IMG/VR virus record: IMGVR_UViG_3300047445_000186
Span: 1-64,000 of that record
Direction: 5' to 3' (one strand)
DNA: 64,000 bases
This document shows, in pieces, positions 4,129-57,591 of this stretch. The position numbers were made by a program, and so were the translations under genes. Numbering within the stretch: the stretch's first letter is position 1; every line of letters starts with the position of its first letter. Below the pieces are notes generated by a model, which worked only from the letters and a program-made list of their open reading frames with translations, was not told the origin of the DNA and searched no databases.

Positions 4129-5847
4129 ATGTCTCAAATGACTTCGTTCTGGCGCATCGTTGCTCCTAAGACACGTAAGCAACTGTACACAACGCTCAGC
4201 ACGGATGCGTACGATCCACGCTCGACAGATATGTCGTCCATGGCTGCAGTTACTTGGTACTCGCAGATCATGCGCGGGCCAGGTACTCGGATGGCTTCGT
4301 ACAAGCAGTACGACACAATGGATACCGACATCGACATCTCGCGTTCCCTCGACATTATCGCCGAAGAAATGTCCGGCAAGGATGACAAGACTGATCTGCC
4401 GTTCGTGATCAAGTGGCAGAAGGAAGACAACCAAGACGTGTCTGACACGACAGTTGTGACAGTTCGTGCTGCTCTTCGTCAGTGGGCGCAGATGCAGGAT
4501 CTGAAGAAGCGCGTGTTCAGCACGGCTCGAACGATGATCAAGTACGGTGATTGCTTCTTCCGCAAGGGTTCTGACACGCGTAAGTGGACGTACGTCGATC
4601 CATCGCTCGTGATTGGTATCGAGGTTGACGAGCTCGGCACGAAGGTCGCTTATCATGTGAAGCGTCCAGCTCAACAGCAACAGCAATCGCAGATGTACAC
4701 GACCCAGCGTATGGATGACGTTGACGTCGTTCCAGCGGCTGCGATGATTCACTTCTCGATGTGTGACGACATGGGCGACTCTGCTCCGTTCGGTCACTCA
4801 GTGCTGAAGCCAATCTTCCGTGTCTACCGTCAACTTTCGATGCTTGAAGATGCGGTGATCATTTACCGTATCGTTCGTGCTCCAGAACGCCGTGTGTTCT
4901 ACATCGACGTCGGGAACATGAACCAACAACAGGTCAAGCGTTACCTCGAGTCGGTCAAGAACGAAATCCGTCAGAAGCGCGCGCCAGGAACGACTGCTGG
5001 CGGCAAGGCTGAAGTTGACGGCCAATTCGATCCTACGTCGCTCCAAGAAGATTACTTCTTCCCAGTCACGGCTGCCGGTAAGGGTTCACGTGTTGAAACC
5101 CTGCCAGGCGGCACTGAAGACTTCGGTACGAATCTACTCCGCTCGTTCGCTGAGAAGATCTTCCGCGGTCTGCGTATTCCGACCTCGTACCTTGGCGGTC
5201 AAGAGGGTGCTGGCGCTCAGACGAACGACGGCAAGGTCGGTATCGCGTACATCGAAGAACTTCGGTTCGCGAACTTCATCACGCGTCTGCAAGACCGGAT
5301 GAACGAAATCTATGACCAAGAATTCAAGATCTACTTGAAGGTCTGTGGTCTCCGCATTGACGATGAAGTGTTCCAGGTCCGTCTGCCAGATCCAGCGAAC
5401 TTCGCGCTGTACCGTCAGGCTGCGCTCGATGCCGATCTGATTGCATCGTTCCAGAACATTCAGGAAGTTAAGTTCCTGTCGCGTCGCTTCATCTTGAAGC
5501 GTTACCTCGGTCTGACGGATGACGAAATCCAGATGAACGAAGTGATGATCAAGGAAGAGAAGAACATGTCTGACAACGCGATTGTGCCGATCATGCAGCA
5601 GATGTATGACGATGCAGTGTACGCGAATCGTGCCGAGATCACGGTTGACGGTGAGAACGTTGATCAAGGTGGCGGTGGTACTGACGAAGCTGGCGATCCA
5701 GGAGCAGGTCTCTTGGATAACGACTTCGAAGACAAGCCATTCGCATCAGCGCCTGATGAGTCTCCAGAGGCAGCTCCACCTGAAGGTGCTGATGAAACTG
5801 GTGCAGAACCACCAGCGGCAGGTGAAGAACCGCCAGCAGCCGGCTAA
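4129..5847 (+). CDS. portal protein (T4 gp20-like)
   Basis: LSMLEDAVIIYRIVRAPERRVFYIDVGNM, EDYFFP, VETLPGG signature motifs. Confidence 0.95.
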   Translation: MSQMTSFWRIVAPKTRKQLYTTLSTDAYDPRSTDMSSMAAVTWYSQIMRGPGTRMASYKQYDTMDTDIDISRSLDIIAEEMSGKDDKTDLPFVIKWQKEDNQDVSDTTVVTVRAALRQWAQMQDLKKRVFSTARTMIKYGDCFFRKGSDTRKWTYVDPSLVIGIEVDELGTKVAYHVKRPAQQQQQSQMYTTQRMDDVDVVPAAAMIHFSMCDDMGDSAPFGHSVLKPIFRVYRQLSMLEDAVIIYRIVRAPERRVFYIDVGNMNQQQVKRYLESVKNEIRQKRAPGTTAGGKAEVDGQFDPTSLQEDYFFPVTAAGKGSRVETLPGGTEDFGTNLLRSFAEKIFRGLRIPTSYLGGQEGAGAQTNDGKVGIAYIEELRFANFITRLQDRMNEIYDQEFKIYLKVCGLRIDDEVFQVRLPDPANFALYRQAALDADLIASFQNIQEVKFLSRRFILKRYLGLTDDEIQMNEVMIKEEKNMSDNAIVPIMQQMYDDAVYANRAEITVDGENVDQGGGGTDEAGDPGAGLLDNDFEDKPFASAPDESPEAAPPEGADETGAEPPAAGEEPPAAG

Positions 5848-5850
5848 ATA
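5845..5850 (+). promoter_or_regulatory. late promoter TAAATA
   Basis: overlaps portal stop, 27 nt before gp21. Confidence 0.6.
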
Positions 5851-5876
5851 CAGGACTATTAGGCTAAGGAGCACTC

Positions 5877-6485
5877 ATGCAGCTGTTGAAAGAATACCTC
5901 GATCCAAGCACCACCAATCTGACCGAAATGAAGAAGGTTGGCGGCGATCTCTACCTGTCTGGCATCATGATGCAAGCAGCACTGAAGAACGGCAATGGCC
6001 GCGTCTATCCAGTGAATGAAATCGCCCGTGCAGTTCAAGAGTGTCAAGACAAGATCACCAAGGGTAACTTCATCCTTGGCGAACTGAATCACCCAGACTC
6101 GTTGAGCATCAATCTCGCGAACGTTTCGCACGCTATCACTGAGATCCGCATGGACGGTAATAACGCTGTTGGCAAGATGAAGCTCTTGAACACGCCAGCT
6201 GGTAACATCGCAAAGGCTATCATCGAAGGCGGCGTTCGTCTTGGTGTTTCCTCGCGCGGTACCGGTAACGTGAACGAAGGCGGCGAAGTTGGTGACTTCT
6301 CGTTCGTCACAATGGACATCGTTTCTACTCCATCGGCTCCAGATGCATTCCCATCGGTAGTGCAAGAAGCTATGGGCTCGAAGAAGATTCTCTCGCTCGC
6401 TGAAGCTGTTGTTGTCGATCCAAAGGCACAGAAGTTCTTTGCGGCTGAGATCAAGAACCTGATCGCATCCCTCACAAAGAAGTAA
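5877..6485 (+). CDS. prohead core protease (T4 gp21-like)
   Basis: NGNGRVY, GELNHP (catalytic His), VSH, NTPAG, GVSSRG (catalytic Ser), DIVSTPSAP. Confidence 0.93.
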   Translation: MQLLKEYLDPSTTNLTEMKKVGGDLYLSGIMMQAALKNGNGRVYPVNEIARAVQECQDKITKGNFILGELNHPDSLSINLANVSHAITEIRMDGNNAVGKMKLLNTPAGNIAKAIIEGGVRLGVSSRGTGNVNEGGEVGDFSFVTMDIVSTPSAPDAFPSVVQEAMGSKKILSLAEAVVVDPKAQKFFAAEIKNLIASLTKK

Positions 6486-6488
6486 TCC

Positions 6489-7322
6489 ATGAAGCTCCTT
6501 CAAGAAATGCTGGGGCTGCTTGAAGCCTCGGCTAAGTTCGCAACTGATGCGGACGGTAATCTGATTCCAGCAAAGCTGCCTAAGCTCAGCCTTGGCGCGA
6601 TCAATGCAGCAATCTATCGTGTCGCAATCGCTTCGGTGAAGCTTCCAGCTGACGTGAAGGCTGACGCTCAGTTCACTGCAAAAGAAACAGATCGTTTCTT
6701 CAGCTCCCAGAACGACGAAGTGCTTTCGCAACTCGAGAAGTTCGCAGACGGCCGCGGGAACTATCAAGACGACGTGCTTGAAGCGTTCTACCGAGCGCTC
6801 GAAGATGTGGGTAACGAGATCATCGAGTACTACTCGAACAAAATGAATCACGCTCCAGGCTATCAAGCGCCAAAGATCGCTGCCTTCGATGCTGAAAAGG
6901 TTCCATCGTCCCGCGTGATCGCTGAGCTGAAGAAGTTCCCACACTGGGAAGAAGGTGTTCGCATTGAGAAGTGGACCGAGCAGAATCAAAAGAATGCGCG
7001 TAAAGCAAAGCACGCTTCTATGGTCTCTCCAGCGCTGATCGACAAGGTCGTGAAGGAATTCGACGCTCGCTTTGATGGCGAATTCACTGACAAGATCGCG
7101 AAAGAAATCACGCGCGATCCAGGCATGTTCGGCCTTCCAAATGGGTACGCTCCAAAGACTGGTGCAGAAGTTCGCGCCAAGATTCTTACATGGAAGCCAC
7201 GTGACATCATCGAGTGGATCATCGAGAACTCACGCAAGCTCAGCCACGATGAAATTTCTGCAGCCTTGAGCAGCAAGAAAACAGTCGACGCGATCTGGGC
7301 TAAGGTCTCCAAGGGTAAGTGA
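6489..7322 (+). CDS. hypothetical virion internal head protein
   Basis: 277 aa in head operon; N-terminus MKLLQEMLGLLEA resembles capsid-targeting/cleavage leader. Confidence 0.6.
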   Translation: MKLLQEMLGLLEASAKFATDADGNLIPAKLPKLSLGAINAAIYRVAIASVKLPADVKADAQFTAKETDRFFSSQNDEVLSQLEKFADGRGNYQDDVLEAFYRALEDVGNEIIEYYSNKMNHAPGYQAPKIAAFDAEKVPSSRVIAELKKFPHWEEGVRIEKWTEQNQKNARKAKHASMVSPALIDKVVKEFDARFDGEFTDKIAKEITRDPGMFGLPNGYAPKTGAEVRAKILTWKPRDIIEWIIENSRKLSHDEISAALSSKKTVDAIWAKVSKGK

Positions 7323-51731: not shown

Positions 51732-51798
51732 GCTTGTAAGTTGAATGTTCGGAAGGATCCTTCGTGGTCCTTCCGCTTTTTCATTTCCAAAGGAAAAT

Positions 51799-53124: not shown

Positions 53125-53318
53125 TGGAGCGCTATCAACTCCGGGTTATGGCTGAGAAAGCCGATCTGGACGTGCGTCTCGATCTACTCACGAAGTACAT
53201 CGACTCGAACCCACAGTACTTACGGATGGATGAGGAACAACAGGACCTTCTGGTGCGGCAACGCATGATCATGGAAGAGTACGCTGAAGTTCTCTCTGAG
53301 CGCATCAACACGTTCTGA
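53124..53318 (+). CDS. small helical-hairpin protein (crAss001_48-related pattern)
   Basis: YQLRVMAEKADLD.RL..L..YI...EEQQDLL..Q...M.EY..VL.ERI. Confidence 0.65.
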   Translation: MERYQLRVMAEKADLDVRLDLLTKYIDSNPQYLRMDEEQQDLLVRQRMIMEEYAEVLSERINTF

Positions 53319-53398
53319 TCCCACGGCTGATAGGCCGTTCCCTTAGGCATCGTTACAATTGAACTTCAACTTGTAACGGTGCCTTTCTCGTCTCTGCA

Positions 53399-53878
53399 AT
53401 GGAAAAACAAAGAATCAATCTGTTCGCTCTCGGAACAAAGAACGAGGAGTACATGGCTGAACTCCCGACGTTCTTCGAGCAGTGGGCACAGGAAATCGAA
53501 GAGGCGGCACCGATCTTTGAAATGGAAGGCGTGCGTCTCGAAAAGCTCGCATCTGCTCTTCCACATCATCAGTTCTTCTACGCAGGTCGTGCTCAAGAAG
53601 CTCGGGCTGTTGTGAAGTGGCTCGAAATCTCGAAGGCCCAGAAGGAATCTCGGCACGTCAAGAATTACAACAACCAACCTCGCGCTCTTGGCGTGAAGGA
53701 ACAGTCGCTGTACATCCAAGGCGAGAAGGACGTCGTCGAGCTGAATCAACTGATCGTTGAAGCGAATTTGAAACAACAACAATTTGACGAGATCGTCGAG
53801 GCCATCAAGCAGATGGGCTGGATGCTCGGTCACATCACAAAGCTTCGTGTCGCAGAAATGCAGGACGCGATCATTTAA
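53399..53878 (+). CDS. uvsY: recombination mediator (UvsY-like)
   Basis: helical; YIQGEKDV, EAIKQMGWML..ITKLR; between uvsX and uvsW. Confidence 0.7.
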   Translation: MEKQRINLFALGTKNEEYMAELPTFFEQWAQEIEEAAPIFEMEGVRLEKLASALPHHQFFYAGRAQEARAVVKWLEISKAQKESRHVKNYNNQPRALGVKEQSLYIQGEKDVVELNQLIVEANLKQQQFDEIVEAIKQMGWMLGHITKLRVAEMQDAII

Positions 53879-54165
53879 TGGCAACCATCTCTAACTTCGG
53901 CGCCAGCACAATGGCCGCTTCGTCAGATCCAATCGCAGTGATCGGGTACAAGGACGAAGACATTTATCTCGTTCTGAATCTGCATGAGAACGGACAAGCT
54001 GTGAAGCTAACGTTCGAGCCAGAATCGACGATCAGCAATCTCGAAACCGTTCGCGTGAACATGCTCATGATGATGCTTGCTGGTGCAGCAATCACGGCTG
54101 AGAGCACGATGAAATACATCCGTGCAAAGAACCTCGAGCGCCATTTCCGTTTCAGTGCTCCATGA
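53878..54165 (+). CDS. hypothetical protein
   Basis: 95 aa, starts MATISNFG. Confidence 0.6.
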   Translation: MATISNFGASTMAASSDPIAVIGYKDEDIYLVLNLHENGQAVKLTFEPESTISNLETVRVNMLMMMLAGAAITAESTMKYIRAKNLERHFRFSAP

Positions 54166-55565
54166 AGACGGCGCACATTTGGGTACGCGACGAAGTGTAC
54201 ATGACTGTCGCCGGCATTGAGCCGAGCGAGCACCAGTTCTTCTGGGTGAAGTACGGCATTGAGGTCGAAGGTTCGTTCTACATGCCAGCTCGCAAGCTCG
54301 GTCGCTGGGATGGCAAGCTTCGGTACTACGAGAAGACTGGGAAGGTCTTCCTGCGTTTCCTGGCCGACATCATTCCGTTCCTCGAGAAGTGGGGATACAC
54401 GGTCGAGCTCCATGATGAGCGTCGCCCAATGAAGCTCGTCGAAGGCCGTCTGCACAAGGACTGGTTCCAAGGGAAGTCACAGGTTCCGATCGAGATCCGA
54501 CCGTATCAAGTTGAAGCTGTGAATGCAGCGCTTGACGCAACATCTGGGTTCGTGATCGCGGCGACGGGTGCTGGCAAGACGATCATGGTTGCGGGTCTCT
54601 GTGACGTTGTCGGCTCTGAAGGGTTCCGCTCGATCACGATCGTTCCATCCGCCGACTTGGTTGAACAGACCTCAGCAACGTTCAAGCTGTGCAACATCGA
54701 GCATGGCACGTACTCTGGCGCGAAGAAAGAAATCTACGCACCACACGTGATCGCAACATGGCAATCGCTGCAGAACAATCCGCACGTGATGGAAGACTTT
54801 CAGGTCGCGATCGTTGACGAAGCGCATGGTGCGAAGGCGAACACGATTGGCGATCTGCTCACGAACCACGGGAAGCACATTGGTTATCGTTTCGGCTTCA
54901 CTGGAACATGGCCAAAGCCAGAGACCGATCAGTACACGCTGCGTGGAACGATTGGTGAGAAGCTCTTTGAGATCAGCGCAGCCGATCTGATTCAGATGGG
55001 TTACCTTGCGAATTTGGAAATTCAACCTGTTGAAATCCAAGAGAAGGTCGGCGAAGACTTCCCTGATTACGCATCTGAAAAGGCGTACACGTCGAAGAGC
55101 AAGGAGCGCCTCGAGTTCCTTGCTGACTTGGTGATCGCTCGTGCTGCAGAGCACGGGAACACTCTGGTCCTCGTGAACTCGATCAAGCAAGGTCAGCAGC
55201 TCCAGAAGCTCGTGAAAGATTCGATCTTCCTGTGTGGCTCAGATGAAACCGAAGTGCGAGCTGAATGGTACTCAACGTTCGATAAACGAGATGATCTGAT
55301 CGTCTTTGCGACAGCCGGAATTGCGTCCACGGGTATCTCGATCGATCGCGTGTTCCATCTGATGCTGATCGACTCGGGCAAGTCGTTCGTTCGCGCCATT
55401 CAGTCGATTGGCCGTGGTCTCCGCAAGGGCCGTGACAAGGACTTCGTGTACGTGACTGACGTTTACTCGTCGCTGAAGTGGGGCAAGAAGCATGCCAAGG
55501 AGCGCGCAAAGTTCTACAAGGAAGCGCACTATCCAATCAACAAGGTAATGAAAGCAAAACTGTAA
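54162..55565 (+). CDS. uvsW: SF2 DNA helicase
   Basis: WDGKLR, RPYQ, ATGAGKT, VDEAH, GFTGT, IQSIGRGLR. Confidence 0.92.
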   Translation: MKTAHIWVRDEVYMTVAGIEPSEHQFFWVKYGIEVEGSFYMPARKLGRWDGKLRYYEKTGKVFLRFLADIIPFLEKWGYTVELHDERRPMKLVEGRLHKDWFQGKSQVPIEIRPYQVEAVNAALDATSGFVIAATGAGKTIMVAGLCDVVGSEGFRSITIVPSADLVEQTSATFKLCNIEHGTYSGAKKEIYAPHVIATWQSLQNNPHVMEDFQVAIVDEAHGAKANTIGDLLTNHGKHIGYRFGFTGTWPKPETDQYTLRGTIGEKLFEISAADLIQMGYLANLEIQPVEIQEKVGEDFPDYASEKAYTSKSKERLEFLADLVIARAAEHGNTLVLVNSIKQGQQLQKLVKDSIFLCGSDETEVRAEWYSTFDKRDDLIVFATAGIASTGISIDRVFHLMLIDSGKSFVRAIQSIGRGLRKGRDKDFVYVTDVYSSLKWGKKHAKERAKFYKEAHYPINKVMKAKL

Positions 55566-55738
55566 TGGACCAAAATATTATTCACCACATTTTGAACACA
55601 TTTGACGAGGTGAAGGATGCGAGCAATGGCCGTCGTTTGAAGCTCAGTGATGAGGTTATCGCCACACTAACATCTGCAGCGATAATTCGAGAAACATATG
55701 GGTGGTATGAAGAACGTGACAACAATCGTGGTGCATAA
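55565..55738 (+). CDS. hypothetical protein
   Basis: 57 aa, TAATG couplings on both sides. Confidence 0.55.
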   Translation: MDQNIIHHILNTFDEVKDASNGRRLKLSDEVIATLTSAAIIRETYGWYEERDNNRGA

Positions 55739-56112
55739 TGCGAGCTAAAATTCTTGAACTGAACGTGCCGAACAAGAACGGCCGCATTTACACGACTGAG
55801 GCTGTCCAGGCCGCGATCGAGCAGACCAAGGGCCGTGACATCTTCGGCTCCATTGGATATCCCGATGACTTCAATGGCACGGTCAATCTGGAACGTGTCT
55901 CGCACCGCGCTGTGAATATCCGCATCGAAGACGGTGACGTGTTCGCTGACATCAAGATCATGAACACCCCGAACGGGAAGATCTTGAAGCAACTCGAAGG
56001 CGCTGATGTTCCTCTCCATTTCCGACCAGCCGGCTTTGCGAACATCGCAGCAGACGGCACGGTTTCCGATTACCAAATTATCAGCATCGATGTGGTGCAT
56101 GACCCAGCATGA
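55738..56112 (+). CDS. prohead protease paralog lacking catalytic residues
   Basis: NKNGRIY, VSH, NTPNG, IDVV..P align to 5877-6485; ELNH->SIGY and SSRG->RPAG. Confidence 0.8.
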   Translation: MRAKILELNVPNKNGRIYTTEAVQAAIEQTKGRDIFGSIGYPDDFNGTVNLERVSHRAVNIRIEDGDVFADIKIMNTPNGKILKQLEGADVPLHFRPAGFANIAADGTVSDYQIISIDVVHDPA

Positions 56113-56333
56113 CAGCTGATGAATTCTTTGAATGCCGGCCTGGCGATACGGTTCGCCTGAACTGTGAACTCTGGTTCGGCAACGGACATGATAAAGAGAA
56201 GACGGTTCTTGTAGAAAGTACTCCATTCACGGTTATCCGAGGACACCTCGGCTTTTACAACTATTACCTGTACGTCGAGACCGAAGACAAGGTTCCGTAC
56301 AAACTGCAATATCAATCTTTGGAACGCGTATGA
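56109..56333 (+). CDS. hypothetical protein
   Basis: 74 aa. Confidence 0.6.
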   Translation: MTADEFFECRPGDTVRLNCELWFGNGHDKEKTVLVESTPFTVIRGHLGFYNYYLYVETEDKVPYKLQYQSLERV

Positions 56334-56845
56334 TTATTCTGAACGAAGTAAACCGACCTTACATGGTCGACTCCCTGACCGCTCCACTGCCACAAGGTTC
56401 GCGCTTCCACTGGATCTTCAGTGGCCAGCAGCGTGACTTCACACTGAGCGACATCACGTACCTCGAGGAAACCGTCGGACCGACCGTGACTCTGATTATC
56501 GCTGGCGCCGAAGTCCGCGTTCCGGGTGCCTGGAACATCCTGATCGTTGACAGCGAGACGTACACGATCGATGCCGTGCCAGTTACCGCTTGCGCAGCAT
56601 TCGAACACCTCGCGTTCGTGTTCTCTCCAGACGACGGGAAGCTGATCACTGAGCCGATCCGTGCCAGCGGCTGGGAACCGAATAGTTCGTGCATCTACCC
56701 GGCCGTTGAAAAGGCGAACGCGGTTGTGCATGCTATTACTCCTGGCACGAGCCATGGAAAACAAGTGCAACGGGGTGTAATCGTTGGTCCGAATGACCTC
56801 TGGCGCTACATTTCTGGATGTACCGTGGGCGATATTCTCGGGTAA
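56330..56845 (+). CDS. conserved jumbo-phage hypothetical protein
   Basis: 171 aa; DFT..ITYLEE..P.V.L.I.G..V.VP..WNILI. Confidence 0.65.
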   Translation: MIILNEVNRPYMVDSLTAPLPQGSRFHWIFSGQQRDFTLSDITYLEETVGPTVTLIIAGAEVRVPGAWNILIVDSETYTIDAVPVTACAAFEHLAFVFSPDDGKLITEPIRASGWEPNSSCIYPAVEKANAVVHAITPGTSHGKQVQRGVIVGPNDLWRYISGCTVGDILG

Positions 56846-56895
56846 AGAAACTGTTCGTTTCCCAGAACGATCCAATTTCATTGAGCTGCCGTCTG

Positions 56896-56901
56896 TAAAT
56901 A
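56896..56901 (+). promoter_or_regulatory. late promoter TAAATA
   Basis: upstream of endolysin. Confidence 0.6.
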
Positions 56902-56925
56902 CCTCCCACATACAGGAGATTACAG

Positions 56926-57495
56926 ATGGCCTTGAAACGAGAAGACTGCCTTGATGATGCGCAGCAAATTGGATGTGAAGTAGAGGCCGTTATGGCCGTG
57001 GCGGCAGTGGAATCGCGTGGAGGCGGCTTCGATCCAGAAGGCTTCCCTAAGACCTTGTTTGAAGGTCAGTGGTTCTACAAGTTTACCAAGGGTAAGTTCG
57101 CAGAGTCACATCCAAATCTGTGCTTCCCTAAATGGGATAAGAAGTCGTACGGCAAGACGTGGCAAGAAGAGAAGGCTCGCCTCGCTACTGCTTGCACACT
57201 GGACCGTACCGCTGCGCTGATGTCCGCATCGTGGGGCATGTTCCAAATCATGGGTTTCAATTTCGCAACTTGCGGCTTCAAGACTGTCCAGCAGTACGTG
57301 TCCGCAGTTTGCAAGGACGAGAACGAGCAACTCGCTGCGTTCACTCAATTCATCATTCACTCCCGCTTGGATGATGAGCTGCGCGAAAAGCGCTGGGCAG
57401 ACTTTGCCCGCCTGTACAACGGTTCGGGTTACGCCCAGAACCAGTACGACGTGAAACTTGCGAAGGCCTACGAACAGGCCAAGAAGCAAGCTTAA
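56926..57495 (+). CDS. endolysin, N-acetylmuramidase (DUF3380-type)
   Basis: AVAAVESRGGGF, LFEGQWF, SASWGMFQIMGFN, FARLYNG..Y..N.YD.KL. Confidence 0.88.
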   Translation: MALKREDCLDDAQQIGCEVEAVMAVAAVESRGGGFDPEGFPKTLFEGQWFYKFTKGKFAESHPNLCFPKWDKKSYGKTWQEEKARLATACTLDRTAALMSASWGMFQIMGFNFATCGFKTVQQYVSAVCKDENEQLAAFTQFIIHSRLDDELREKRWADFARLYNGSGYAQNQYDVKLAKAYEQAKKQA

Positions 57496-57591
57496 CACAA
57501 AACACAATCCCGAATATTTCGTACCTGTAACGGGGACGCGCGCAAGCACGTCCCTTGTTACAATTGTCTCTATTGGTTACAGTTCAAAAGA

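What the first reader, a model, noticed from the sequence alone, without database searches (positions are those of the whole stretch)
55738..56112. Pseudo-protease: gp21 paralog with both catalytic residues replaced
Seen: NGNGRVY/NKNGRIY, LGELNHPD/FGSIGYPD, INLANVSH/VNLERVSH, KLLNTPAG/KIMNTPNG, GVSSRGTG/HFRPAGFA and MDIVSTPS/IDVVHDPA align in order with the real protease (5877-6485). The catalytic His becomes Tyr and the Ser-Ser-Arg motif becomes Arg-Pro-Ala. The fold motifs are kept and the ORF is intact and coupled downstream of uvsW. Inference: non-catalytic binder, either an inhibitor of the phage's own protease oligomer or a decoy.
Basis: partly seen in the sequence, partly recalled or inferred. 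Interest (0 to 1): 0.7.

Follow-up and report, generated by a model that had tools for sequence, protein, structure and literature searches.

The report
Dead prohead-protease core, mobile accessory gene
A jumbo T4-type soil phage carries, besides its real capsid-maturation protease, a small intact copy of the protease core whose catalytic Ser and His are replaced; it belongs to a large, conserved, unnamed family of such "dead" cores that moves between phages, and its function is unknown.

Summary
ORF 55738-56112 (+, 124 aa) is a true homologue of the window's gp21 prohead protease (5877-6485): BLASTP E 7e-21, an AlphaFold model with pLDDT 96, and T4 gp21 (5JBL) as best PDB match. The catalytic His is Tyr41 and the nucleophile Ser is Arg96.

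It is not a private duplicate of this phage's gp21. It is 30% identical to its own gp21 but up to 47% identical to more than 140 distinct clusters of 110-140-aa metagenomic phage proteins. These split from active gp21s in a tree. They carry Arg at the Ser position in 109 of 151 sequences and a hydrophobic or aromatic residue at the His position in 108 of 151. Close pairs give pooled dN/dS of about 0.25.

The proteins lack gp21's N-terminal propeptide and C-terminal tail and never sit in the head module. In this window the gene lies in a 764-nt insertion between uvsW and a conserved 171-aa gene. A 98%-complete sister genome lacks both the insertion and any short copy.

The most likely role is a selected, non-catalytic binder acting in the protease pathway, either as a substrate-groove shield or decoy, or as a gp21 regulator. 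The mechanism is untested, and the complex prediction gave no verdict. The closest precedent is SPN3US gp117 in phiKZ-like phages, which is not detectably the same family.

The parts
55738..56112 (+). Gene for the 124-aa catalytically dead gp21-core homologue (Tyr41 at the His position, Arg96 at the Ser position, Asp118 kept)
5877..6485 (+). Canonical gp21 prohead protease (202 aa; H72, S125, D147). It has N-terminal L-x-E sites and a C-terminal tail with invariant L174-A175-E176, and lies between the portal and scaffold genes
   Evidence: (PF03420, 1.2e-26)
55566..56329 (+). 764-nt insertion relative to sister phages, carrying the possible 57-aa ORF, the dead protease core and a 74-aa ORF. 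In sister contig L034, uvsW's stop overlaps the start of the orf171 homologue
   Evidence: unitig 55563-56349 in run X4
55565..55738 (+). Uncertain 57-aa ORF or AT-richer leader (GC 43% against 54% for the genome; neutral codon score; no homologue found)
56109..56333 (+). 74-aa ORF overlapping the dead-protease stop (ATGA); small beta-barrel-like by Atlas structure matches, no family assigned
54162..55565 (+). UvsW-type helicase, upstream flank of the insertion
56330..56845 (+). Conserved 171-aa gene (phrog_11279), downstream flank of the insertion; 70-74% identical in sister phages
53352..53359 (+). GTTACAAT promoter-like motif, 47 nt before the UvsY-like gene that heads the co-directional run containing uvsW and the dead protease. 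The same motif precedes nrdA at 57557
5844..5851 (+). Late-type motif CTAAATAC, 33 nt before gp21. This motif class is absent between 50736 and 56895, so none lies directly before the dead-protease gene

Best explanation
The ORF is a functional, horizontally acquired accessory gene. It encodes the bare core of a T4-type (S77) prohead protease that can no longer act as a serine protease.

Shown: it has the gp21 fold. It starts where the gp21 core starts and stops where the core ends, so it lacks the N-terminal propeptide and the C-terminal tail. T4 literature ties those segments to auto-cleavage and to targeting into the prohead. The His is Tyr and the Ser is Arg. It belongs to a large conserved clade with the same changes. 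It sits in a variable slot of a recombination-gene run, not in the head module.

Inferred mechanism: a soluble cytoplasmic pseudo-enzyme that still uses the former active-site groove. The loop glycines and at least one Arg or Lys in the loop are kept, which fits binding of a carboxylate such as the P1 Glu of L/I-x-E sites. It would hold protease substrates or substrate-like loops without cutting them, competing with or shielding them from gp21.

The most plausible benefit is control of off-target or premature gp21 action in the cytoplasm. That includes cleavage of host 'tripwire' loops, which was recently shown to switch on CBASS immunity.
For: Homology and fold.

Dead site.

Family: at least 149 other representatives of 50%-identity clusters, mostly 110-140 aa. 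The Ser column is Arg in 109 of 151. The His column is hydrophobic or aromatic in 108 of 151. Arg or Lys is present at loop position 96 or 98 in 131 of 151. Only 1 of 151 keeps both His and Ser. The family has its own conserved residues (D9, P11, N60-L-R-I-E64, F95) alongside shared core motifs (N-x-N-G-R-x-Y, V-S-H, T-P-x-G).

Separate clade from active gp21s: SH-aLRT 95. With wider sampling, only 3 label changes are needed over 193 rows.

Purifying selection: dN/dS of 0.10, 0.25 and 0.64 in three independent close pairs, pooled about 0.25.

Co-occurrence with an intact gp21 in every complete genome checked: the window, Yersinia phage fHe-Yen9-03, LR756511 and LR756501.

Accessory and mobile: absent from the 98%-complete sister genome and from the same slot in relatives. 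Contexts elsewhere vary. No relative is above 47% identity, whereas gp21 has relatives at 70-89%.

Background: gp21 activity triggers CBASS by cutting a CD-NTase loop (PMC12991175). CBASS escape mutations map to prohead proteases (bioRxiv 10.1101/2023.05.21.541620).
Against: No binding partner, ligand or phenotype is shown for any family member.

The role of the loop Arg as a carboxylate or Glu binder is my inference. I could not inspect model coordinates.

The conserved gain of Arg and other family-specific residues could equally mark a new, unrelated ligand.

Pfam's S77 model does not reach threshold on this protein.

No expression data exist; only DNA runs hold the sequence.

The promoter class is inferred from motifs only.

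Whether the unknown rhizosphere host has a protease-sensing defence is not known.
Confidence: 0.38

Rival explanations
1. Regulatory or 'poison' subunit of the phage's own protease. The dead core would co-assemble with gp21, which is pentameric in T4. It would delay activation, keep gp21 out of proheads or inactive in the cytoplasm, or mimic the natural short gp21 isoform made from an internal start in T4.
For: It is a homologue of a self-associating enzyme; T4 gp21 is a pentamer (PMC9958956). T4 makes an N-terminally shortened gp21 that is reported as needed for head assembly (PMC9026906; RefSeq also annotates an internal start). The family's N-terminus lies close to that region. Every complete genome with a short copy also has an intact gp21. 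Pseudo-enzymes often regulate their active relatives (PMC11266112, abstract).
Against: It is only 30% identical to the resident gp21. The gene is mobile, and sister phages with 70-89% identical gp21 do without it. That fits poorly with a co-evolved interface. It has no tail to enter the prohead. I could not examine the pentamer interface residues.
Confidence: 0.2
2. The fold has been re-used for a job unrelated to proteolysis, for example binding an anionic ligand, nucleic acid or a replication or recombination protein. The newly fixed Arg and the family-specific surface would serve that job.
For: The family has its own conserved residues that active gp21s lack (D9, P11, N60, R62, E64, F95, R96). 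Genes of the family repeatedly lie among DNA-metabolism genes: UvsX/UvsY/UvsW here, and helicase, gp46/47-like nuclease, PD-(D/E)XK nuclease and ligase elsewhere. None lies in a head module.
Against: No neighbour is conserved across contexts. Phage variable slots commonly sit between replication genes regardless of cargo function. The active-site loop architecture (G-x-G, F/Y before the Arg) is kept, which suggests the old site is still the working site.
Confidence: 0.2
3. It is still a peptidase that uses other residues, for example the conserved Ser55-His56 pair or Thr77 with Asp118.
For: Ser55 (129 of 151), His56 (138 of 150), Thr77 (142 of 151) and often Asp118 are conserved.
Against: The same V-S-H and T-P-x-G motifs are conserved in active gp21s in addition to the real triad. 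T4 gp21 lacks that His altogether, so they are most simply structural. Asp118 is Asn, Ser or Ala in about half of the family.
Confidence: 0.04
4. It is a decaying remnant of a duplicated or captured protease gene with no function.
For: The catalytic residues are lost. The window copy has no close orthologue. It sits in a plastic region.
Against: The frame is intact and codon use is gene-like. The model is confident. More than 140 diverged clusters share the same length and the same non-random replacements. dN/dS is below 1 in all five pairs compared. The gene is 100% identical in a second assembly.
Confidence: 0.04

Closest known systems
T4 gp21 prohead core protease (MEROPS/Pfam S77, PF03420; structure 5JBL)
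   Same: Same fold and clear sequence homology over the whole core (T4 residues about 40-174). Shared motifs are N-x-N-G-R-x-Y, G-x-x-x-x-P, T-P-x-G, the G-x-G of the active-site loop, and the invariant Asp.
   Different: It lacks the catalytic His and Ser, the N-terminal propeptide and the C-terminal tail with L-x-E auto-cleavage sites. It is not in the head module, is not universal among relatives, and is about 124 aa instead of about 200-215 aa.
SPN3US gp117 and relatives (201phi2-1 gp206, PhiPA3 gp143): short diverged paralogs of the phiKZ-type (S80) prohead protease (Thomas et al. 2017, PMC5694885)
   Same: Same idea: a second, short (136-161 aa) protease-like gene in a giant phage, lacking the C-terminal targeting region, outside the role of the true protease, with function unknown.
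   Different: It is not detectably the same family (hhalign probability 0.2% against the family profile). gp117 is reported to keep the aligned Ser and Asp and to lack only an aligned His, whereas here the Ser is replaced by a conserved Arg. The two look like parallel events in two protease lineages.
Pseudo-proteases and pseudo-enzymes in general (e.g. iRhoms, FtsHi, inactive metallopeptidase homologues)
   Same: A catalytically dead relative of a protease is retained under selection, presumably for binding or regulation.
   Different: Those are cellular proteins with known partners. This is a phage accessory protein with no known partner.
Herpesvirus assemblin (S21)
   Same: Same superfold. 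These are the second-best structural matches.
   Different: Only remote structural similarity (TM about 0.5-0.6, 8-12% identity). Assemblins are active Ser-His-His proteases.

Membership tests
Peptidase S77 (active T4-type prohead protease) | Sequence and fold homology to gp21 | tested here: met
   BLASTP E 7e-21 to the window's gp21; phrog_207 at 4.7e-17; family profile against T4 gp21 at hhalign 95.7%; Foldseek top hit 5JBL with TM 0.78
Peptidase S77 (active T4-type prohead protease) | Reaches Pfam PF03420 gathering score | tested here: not met
   No Pfam hit at E up to 1 for the window protein. 60 of 135 family members match PF03420 at E up to 0.01
Peptidase S77 (active T4-type prohead protease) | Catalytic His (T4 H85) | tested here: not met
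   Tyr41. In the family this column is Met 55, Tyr 17, Phe 11, and His in only 4 of 151
Peptidase S77 (active T4-type prohead protease) | Nucleophile Ser (T4 S140) in G-V-S-S-R-G | tested here: not met
   Arg96 in H-F-R-P-A-G; Arg in 109 of 151 family members
Peptidase S77 (active T4-type prohead protease) | Invariant Asp of the core (window gp21 D147); an Asp is named as third triad member in PMC5694885 | tested here: met
   Asp118 is kept here. Across the family the column is Asp 70, Asn 45, Ser 15, Ala 8. That this is the triad Asp is inferred from invariance only
Peptidase S77 (active T4-type prohead protease) | N-terminal propeptide and C-terminal tail with L/I-x-E auto-cleavage sites | tested here: not met
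   The alignment starts at gp21 residue 27 and ends at residue 153. gp21's L4-x-E6 and L174-A175-E176, invariant among its close relatives, have no counterpart
Peptidase S77 (active T4-type prohead protease) | Gene placed between portal and scaffold genes of the head module | tested here: not met
   It lies 50 kb away, between uvsW and a conserved 171-aa gene
Peptidase S77 (active T4-type prohead protease) | Proteolytic activity after Glu | not testable with these tools
   Needs an enzyme assay
Unnamed clade of short dead gp21 cores (defined here) | About 110-140 aa, core only; F/Y-R (or an Arg two residues on) in the former nucleophile loop; non-His at the His position; groups apart from active gp21s | tested here: met
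   124 aa; F95-R96; Tyr41. Best identities of 44-48% are to clade members. The clade separates from 7 active gp21s with SH-aLRT 95
SPN3US gp117-type paralogs of the S80 protease | Detectable homology to gp117 | tested here: not met
   hhalign probability 0.24% for the family profile against SPN3US gp117. No match of the profile anywhere in the SPN3US genome
T4 gp68 prohead core protein (141 aa, next to gene 21) | Homology to gp68 | tested here: not met
   hhalign probability 0.14%

The most novel reading that the evidence does not exclude
The family is a phage counter-defence. It would be a dead protease core, made before or alongside gp21, that occupies L/I-x-E 'tripwire' loops of host immune sensors (such as the CD-NTase activation loops of CBASS) or captures free cytoplasmic gp21. 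Protease-sensing immunity would then not be triggered. This would be the first anti-defence protein derived from the very enzyme that the host senses.
Probability: 0.15. Interest if true: 0.85.

Novelty: new variant of a known kind. Interest (0 to 1): 0.55.

Why it matters
Prohead proteases are core, single-copy genes of tailed phages. Extra copies had been noted only once, in phiKZ-like phages, and their function was never determined.

This work shows that T4-type phages and huge phages from soil and other metagenomes share a large, selected family of free-standing, catalytically dead protease cores. These behave as mobile accessory genes. Automatic annotation either misses them or mislabels them as proteases: Pfam often gives no hit, and some are called 'prohead core protein serine protease'.

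Hosts are now known to sense prohead-protease activity, as in CBASS. A conserved dead copy of that enzyme is therefore a concrete, testable candidate for a regulator or counter-measure in that arms race. It can be cloned directly into the published T4/CBASS assay.

If it instead has an unrelated role, it would be a clean example of a viral protease fold re-used with an Arg in place of the nucleophile.

Tried and rejected
1. T4 gp68, a 141-aa prohead core protein adjacent to gene 21, as the true identity: rejected, hhalign probability 0.14%.

2. Same family as SPN3US gp117: rejected at this sensitivity.

3. Recent duplication of the resident gp21: rejected. It is 30% identical to its own gp21 but 44-48% identical to clade members, the tree splits the two groups, and the gene is absent from the sister genome.

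4. Complex prediction of gp21 with the short protein: no verdict (score 0.02, mark 0.32). This is not evidence either way. It was re-sent with only window and search-result sequences.

5. T4 late promoter TATAAATA: no match in the window. A variant motif was derived instead.

6. The generic sigma-70 and terminator scan was no better than shuffles.

7. The search for related loci with the family alignment failed because no conserved 7-10-column stretch was available.

8. Megablast of the locus against cultured phages gave no match.

9. RNA evidence: no RNA run holds the sequence.

10. Rfam on 55300-56500 gave only a 15.9-bit chance hit against a gathering score of 100.

11. Pfam scans of longer family members for telling domain fusions found nothing informative.

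12. NCBIfam gave nothing for the ORF or its small neighbours.

13. An early mis-framed reading of the small upstream ORF (55566 instead of 55565) was corrected.

Full report
THE SETTING

The window is the first 64 kb of a 331,776-bp IMG/VR virus record that is 94% complete. The phage occurs in rhizosphere metagenomes. It has T4-type core genes. Its nearest cultured relative by portal protein is Ralstonia jumbo phage RsoM2USA at 49% identity, followed by XacN1-, RaK2- and Atu_ph07-like jumbo phages.

The head module holds the portal gene (4129-5847), gp21 (5877-6485; Pfam Peptidase_S77 at 1.2e-26) and the scaffold gene (6489-7322).

The finding lies 50 kb away in a co-directional run of genes:
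- gp32-like SSB (50811)
- UvsX (51745)
- UvsY-like (53399)
- UvsW helicase (54162-55565)
- the ORF in question (55738-56112)
- a 74-aa ORF (56109-56333)
- a conserved 171-aa gene (56330-56845)
- endolysin (56926)
- nrdA (57592)

CHECK OF THE OBSERVATION

The ORF is intact at 124 aa. PHROG 207 (head maturation protease) matches at 4.7e-17. Pfam's S77 model does not match this protein.

An AlphaFold2 model built on a 135-sequence alignment has mean pLDDT 96.4. Foldseek places T4 gp21 (5JBL) first with TM 0.78 and E 5e-7, and herpesvirus assemblins next.

The T4 catalytic residues H85 and S140 were checked on the T4 sequence; both are Ala in the crystal construct. They align with gp21 H72 and S125, and with Tyr41 and Arg96 of the ORF. 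The Ser-Ser-Arg-Gly loop reads Arg-Pro-Ala-Gly. The invariant core Asp is kept as D118.

Codon usage is that of a real gene. The longer antisense ORF 55582-56226 is a shadow ORF.

A 172-nt, AT-richer stretch separates uvsW from the ORF. It may encode a 57-aa peptide (55565-55738) whose ends overlap uvsW's stop and the ORF's start as TAATG. Its codon score is neutral and it has no homologue.

WHAT IT REALLY IS: A MEMBER OF A LARGE FAMILY, NOT A PRIVATE PARALOG

An exhaustive phmmer search of 1.84 billion cluster representatives gave 2,248 hits at E up to 0.001 and 301 at E up to 1e-10. Apart from the protein itself, the best 149 are 33-50% identical, and nearly all are 110-140 aa long. None is closer than 47%.

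The window's gp21, in contrast, has many relatives at 70-89% identity.

Catalytic and loop positions, aligned with seven active gp21s (T4, S-PM2, Pelagibacter phage Mosig, PA5oct, XacN1, RsoM2USA, window):

| Position | Composition in the short proteins |
|---|---|
| Nucleophile Ser | Arg in 109 of 151 |
| Catalytic His | Met 55, Tyr 17, Phe 11; hydrophobic or aromatic in 108 of 151 |
| Both His and Ser kept | 1 of 151 |
| Arg or Lys at loop position 96 or 98 | 131 of 151 |

Conserved residues:
- Shared with active gp21s: N-x-N-G-R-x-Y, G37, P42, V-S-H, T-P-x-G, and G99 and G101 of the active-site loop.
- Specific to the short family: D9, P11, N60-L-R-I-E64 and F95.

In a maximum-likelihood tree the seven active gp21s separate from all 151 short proteins (SH-aLRT 95). 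With 30 active and 163 dead sequences, the label needs only three changes, against 28 expected by shuffling. The window's copy sits inside the short clade, not beside its own gp21.

Three independent close pairs within the family give dN/dS of 0.10, 0.25 and 0.64, pooled about 0.25, with no frame disruptions.

Homologues show conservation of a new state, not random decay.

ANATOMY COMPARED WITH gp21

The short proteins begin near T4 residue 40 (window gp21 residue 27) and end at the close of the core (gp21 residue 153). Two segments are therefore missing:
- the N-terminal segment, which in T4 blocks the active site until it is cut off (PMC9958956);
- the C-terminal tail, which carries an L-A-E motif invariant among the window gp21's relatives.

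[quoted passage not shown] By inference, the short protein is a free cytoplasmic core with an unplugged groove.

DISTRIBUTION AND MOBILITY

Members occur on T4-like metagenomic contigs in different neighbourhoods:
- after a helicase, AAA protein and epimerase;
- after gp47/gp46-like nuclease genes and before a PD-(D/E)XK nuclease;
- near a baseplate gene and the portal gene;
- among small genes near a ligase.

None lies in a head module.

Cultured phages almost entirely lack the family. The exceptions found were:
- two huge-phage assemblies, LR756501/503 and LR756511;
- Yersinia jumbo phages fHe-Yen9-03/04, whose g113/g109 is a 144-aa 'hypothetical protein' beside a PhoH-like gene. It keeps S-S-R-G but has no His.

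Each of these genomes, like the window, also encodes a canonical gp21 with His, Ser and Asp.

Sister phages were recovered through uvsW at 74-81% identity. In them the uvsW stop abuts or overlaps the start of the orf171 homologue (L034), or the slot holds other small ORFs (L030, L032, L033). Window 55566-56329 is therefore a 764-nt insertion. The 336-kb sister genome, 98% complete, has only its gp21 and no short copy anywhere.

Read-level hints agree with this. In one run a unitig spans exactly 55563-56349. In another, a low-depth contig carries the first 171 nt of the gene (2 differences) behind an unrelated upstream sequence, with the break exactly at the ATG. That upstream sequence is not in this genome. 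These are single contigs and only suggestive.

LIKELY TIMING (INFERENCE ONLY)

The motif [CG]TAAATA[CGA] is intergenic in 53 of 67 occurrences, usually 25-41 nt before a start codon. It precedes gp21, other structural genes and the endolysin, so it is probably this phage's late-promoter core. None lies between 50736 and 56895.

The run that contains uvsW and the ORF is headed by a different motif, GTTACAAT, at 53352. That motif is intergenic in 19 of 21 occurrences and also precedes nrdA.

The dead core may therefore be made with replication and recombination genes, before or independently of the head genes. No RNA data exist to test this.

HOW IT MOST LIKELY WORKS

Shown: it cannot be a canonical serine protease. 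It is folded, conserved and selected. It lacks the prohead-targeting parts. It is an optional, mobile gene.

Inferred: it acts by binding.

I favour a model (about 0.4) in which the old groove still binds substrate-like peptides. The active-site loop architecture is retained, and it almost always carries an Arg or Lys. This would let the protein shield or compete for L/I-x-E sites in the cytoplasm.

The model gains plausibility from two reports. gp21 activity is sufficient to switch on CBASS by cutting a CD-NTase loop (PMC12991175). CBASS escape mutations map to prohead proteases.

Rivals:
- A mixed-oligomer regulator of gp21 (0.2). T4 gp21 is pentameric and T4 also makes a shortened isoform. 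The gene's mobility and its 30% identity to the resident enzyme argue against a co-evolved interface.
- Re-use of the fold for an unrelated ligand (0.2). The family-specific residues and the DNA-metabolism neighbourhoods fit this.
- A non-canonical peptidase (0.04).
- A dead remnant (0.04).

The one complex prediction gave no verdict and is not counted either way.

COMPARISON WITH WHAT IS KNOWN

The nearest family is Peptidase S77, but the defining catalytic His and Ser, the propeptides and the genomic position were all tested and not met. It should not be annotated as a prohead protease.

The nearest precedent is the set of short paralogs of the phiKZ-type protease described in 2017 as 'unprecedented': SPN3US gp117, 201phi2-1 gp206 and PhiPA3 gp143. 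Their function is unknown, and they have a reported aligned Ser and Asp but no aligned His (PMC5694885). The family profile does not detect gp117, so the two look like parallel inventions.

T4 gp68 is unrelated.

Full-text searches of the held literature found no description of a dead S77-type family. Absence from that library is not proof.

Source names for family members are 'hypothetical protein' or, wrongly, 'Prohead core protein serine protease'.

VERDICT

The thing is a new, family-level variant of a known kind, a phage pseudo-protease or protease paralog. Its function is open and now directly testable.

Interest is 0.55.

Noticed in passing
L034:3689-5001 and L031 (sister phages' uvsW; window equivalent near 54570-54590): uvsW of two sister phages is split by an in-frame insert of about 1.3 kb, right after the Walker-A G-A-G-K. 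The insert ends in H-H-N followed by Thr, which looks like an intein. The window's uvsW is uninterrupted.
   Followed up: partly
window 5844, 7596, 9955, 15156, 22187, 29705, 31688, 32651, 34312, 40214, 40870, 50736, 56895 (+) and 1227 (-): [CG]TAAATA[CGA] is intergenic in 53 of 67 genome occurrences and mostly sits 25-41 nt before start codons of structural genes and the endolysin. It is probably this phage's version of the T4 late promoter. The canonical TATAAATA is absent from the window.
   Followed up: partly
window 50669/50702, 53352, 57557 (also 10920, 11495, 12822): GTTACAAT, often as part of a palindrome (GTTACAA...TTGTAAC), is intergenic in 19 of 21 genome occurrences. It precedes the UvsY-UvsW run and nrdA. 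A longer form, CGTTACA-N18-19-GTACAAT, occurs 12 times in the genome. It is a candidate early or middle promoter, or an operator.
   Followed up: partly
junction uvsW|orf171: window 55565/56330; L030:3815-4051; L032:6377-6686; L033:6299-6585: The same slot carries different small cargo in relatives: a Cys-rich ORF of about 73 aa in L030, an 82-aa ORF in L032 and L033, and nothing in L034. It is a hyperplastic site.
   Followed up: partly
window 55582-56226 (-) and 56312-56911 (-): Antisense shadow ORFs of 214 and 199 aa are longer than the real + strand genes they overlie and have negative codon scores. A longest-ORF gene caller would miss the dead protease gene.
   Followed up: yes
runs X4 and X5 laid on window 53300-57500: In X4 a unitig spans exactly 55563-56349, which is the insertion. 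In X5 a 204-nt low-depth contig has the gene's first 171 nt (2 differences) preceded by 33 unrelated, GC-rich nt, with the break exactly at ATG 55738. That 30-mer is absent from this genome. This hints that the gene also sits in another context in the same habitat.
   Followed up: partly
L027 (LR756501.1 near 74021): In this 735-kb phage assembly the active gp21-like domain is the N-terminus of an 811-aa open frame. The rest of the frame is rich in repeats of the type Y-I-A-E-x-x-D-x-x-I-x-Y, suggesting a protease-scaffold fusion.
   Followed up: no
P0078 (452 aa) and P0071, P0100, LR756511 copy (L015): Some family members carry two tandem dead domains or N- and C-terminal extensions without Pfam matches.
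   Followed up: partly
L016:2977-3411 (Yersinia phage fHe-Yen9-03 g113): This is the only cultured-phage member found. It keeps the S-S-R-G loop and the Asp but has no His at the catalytic position. It lies next to a PhoH-like ATPase. The phage's true gp21 is at about 181.7 kb.
   Followed up: partly
L004:6077-6604 (RsoM2USA_379): The deposited gp21 CDS of Ralstonia phage RsoM2USA starts at the internal Met (175 aa) and is labelled hypothetical, whereas the open frame extends about 35 codons further upstream, like other gp21s.
   Followed up: no
window 51750-51775 (+): A 10-bp-stem hairpin followed by a T-run lies just after the SSB gene and overlaps the predicted UvsX start. It is a possible terminator or attenuator after a highly expressed gene.
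   Followed up: no
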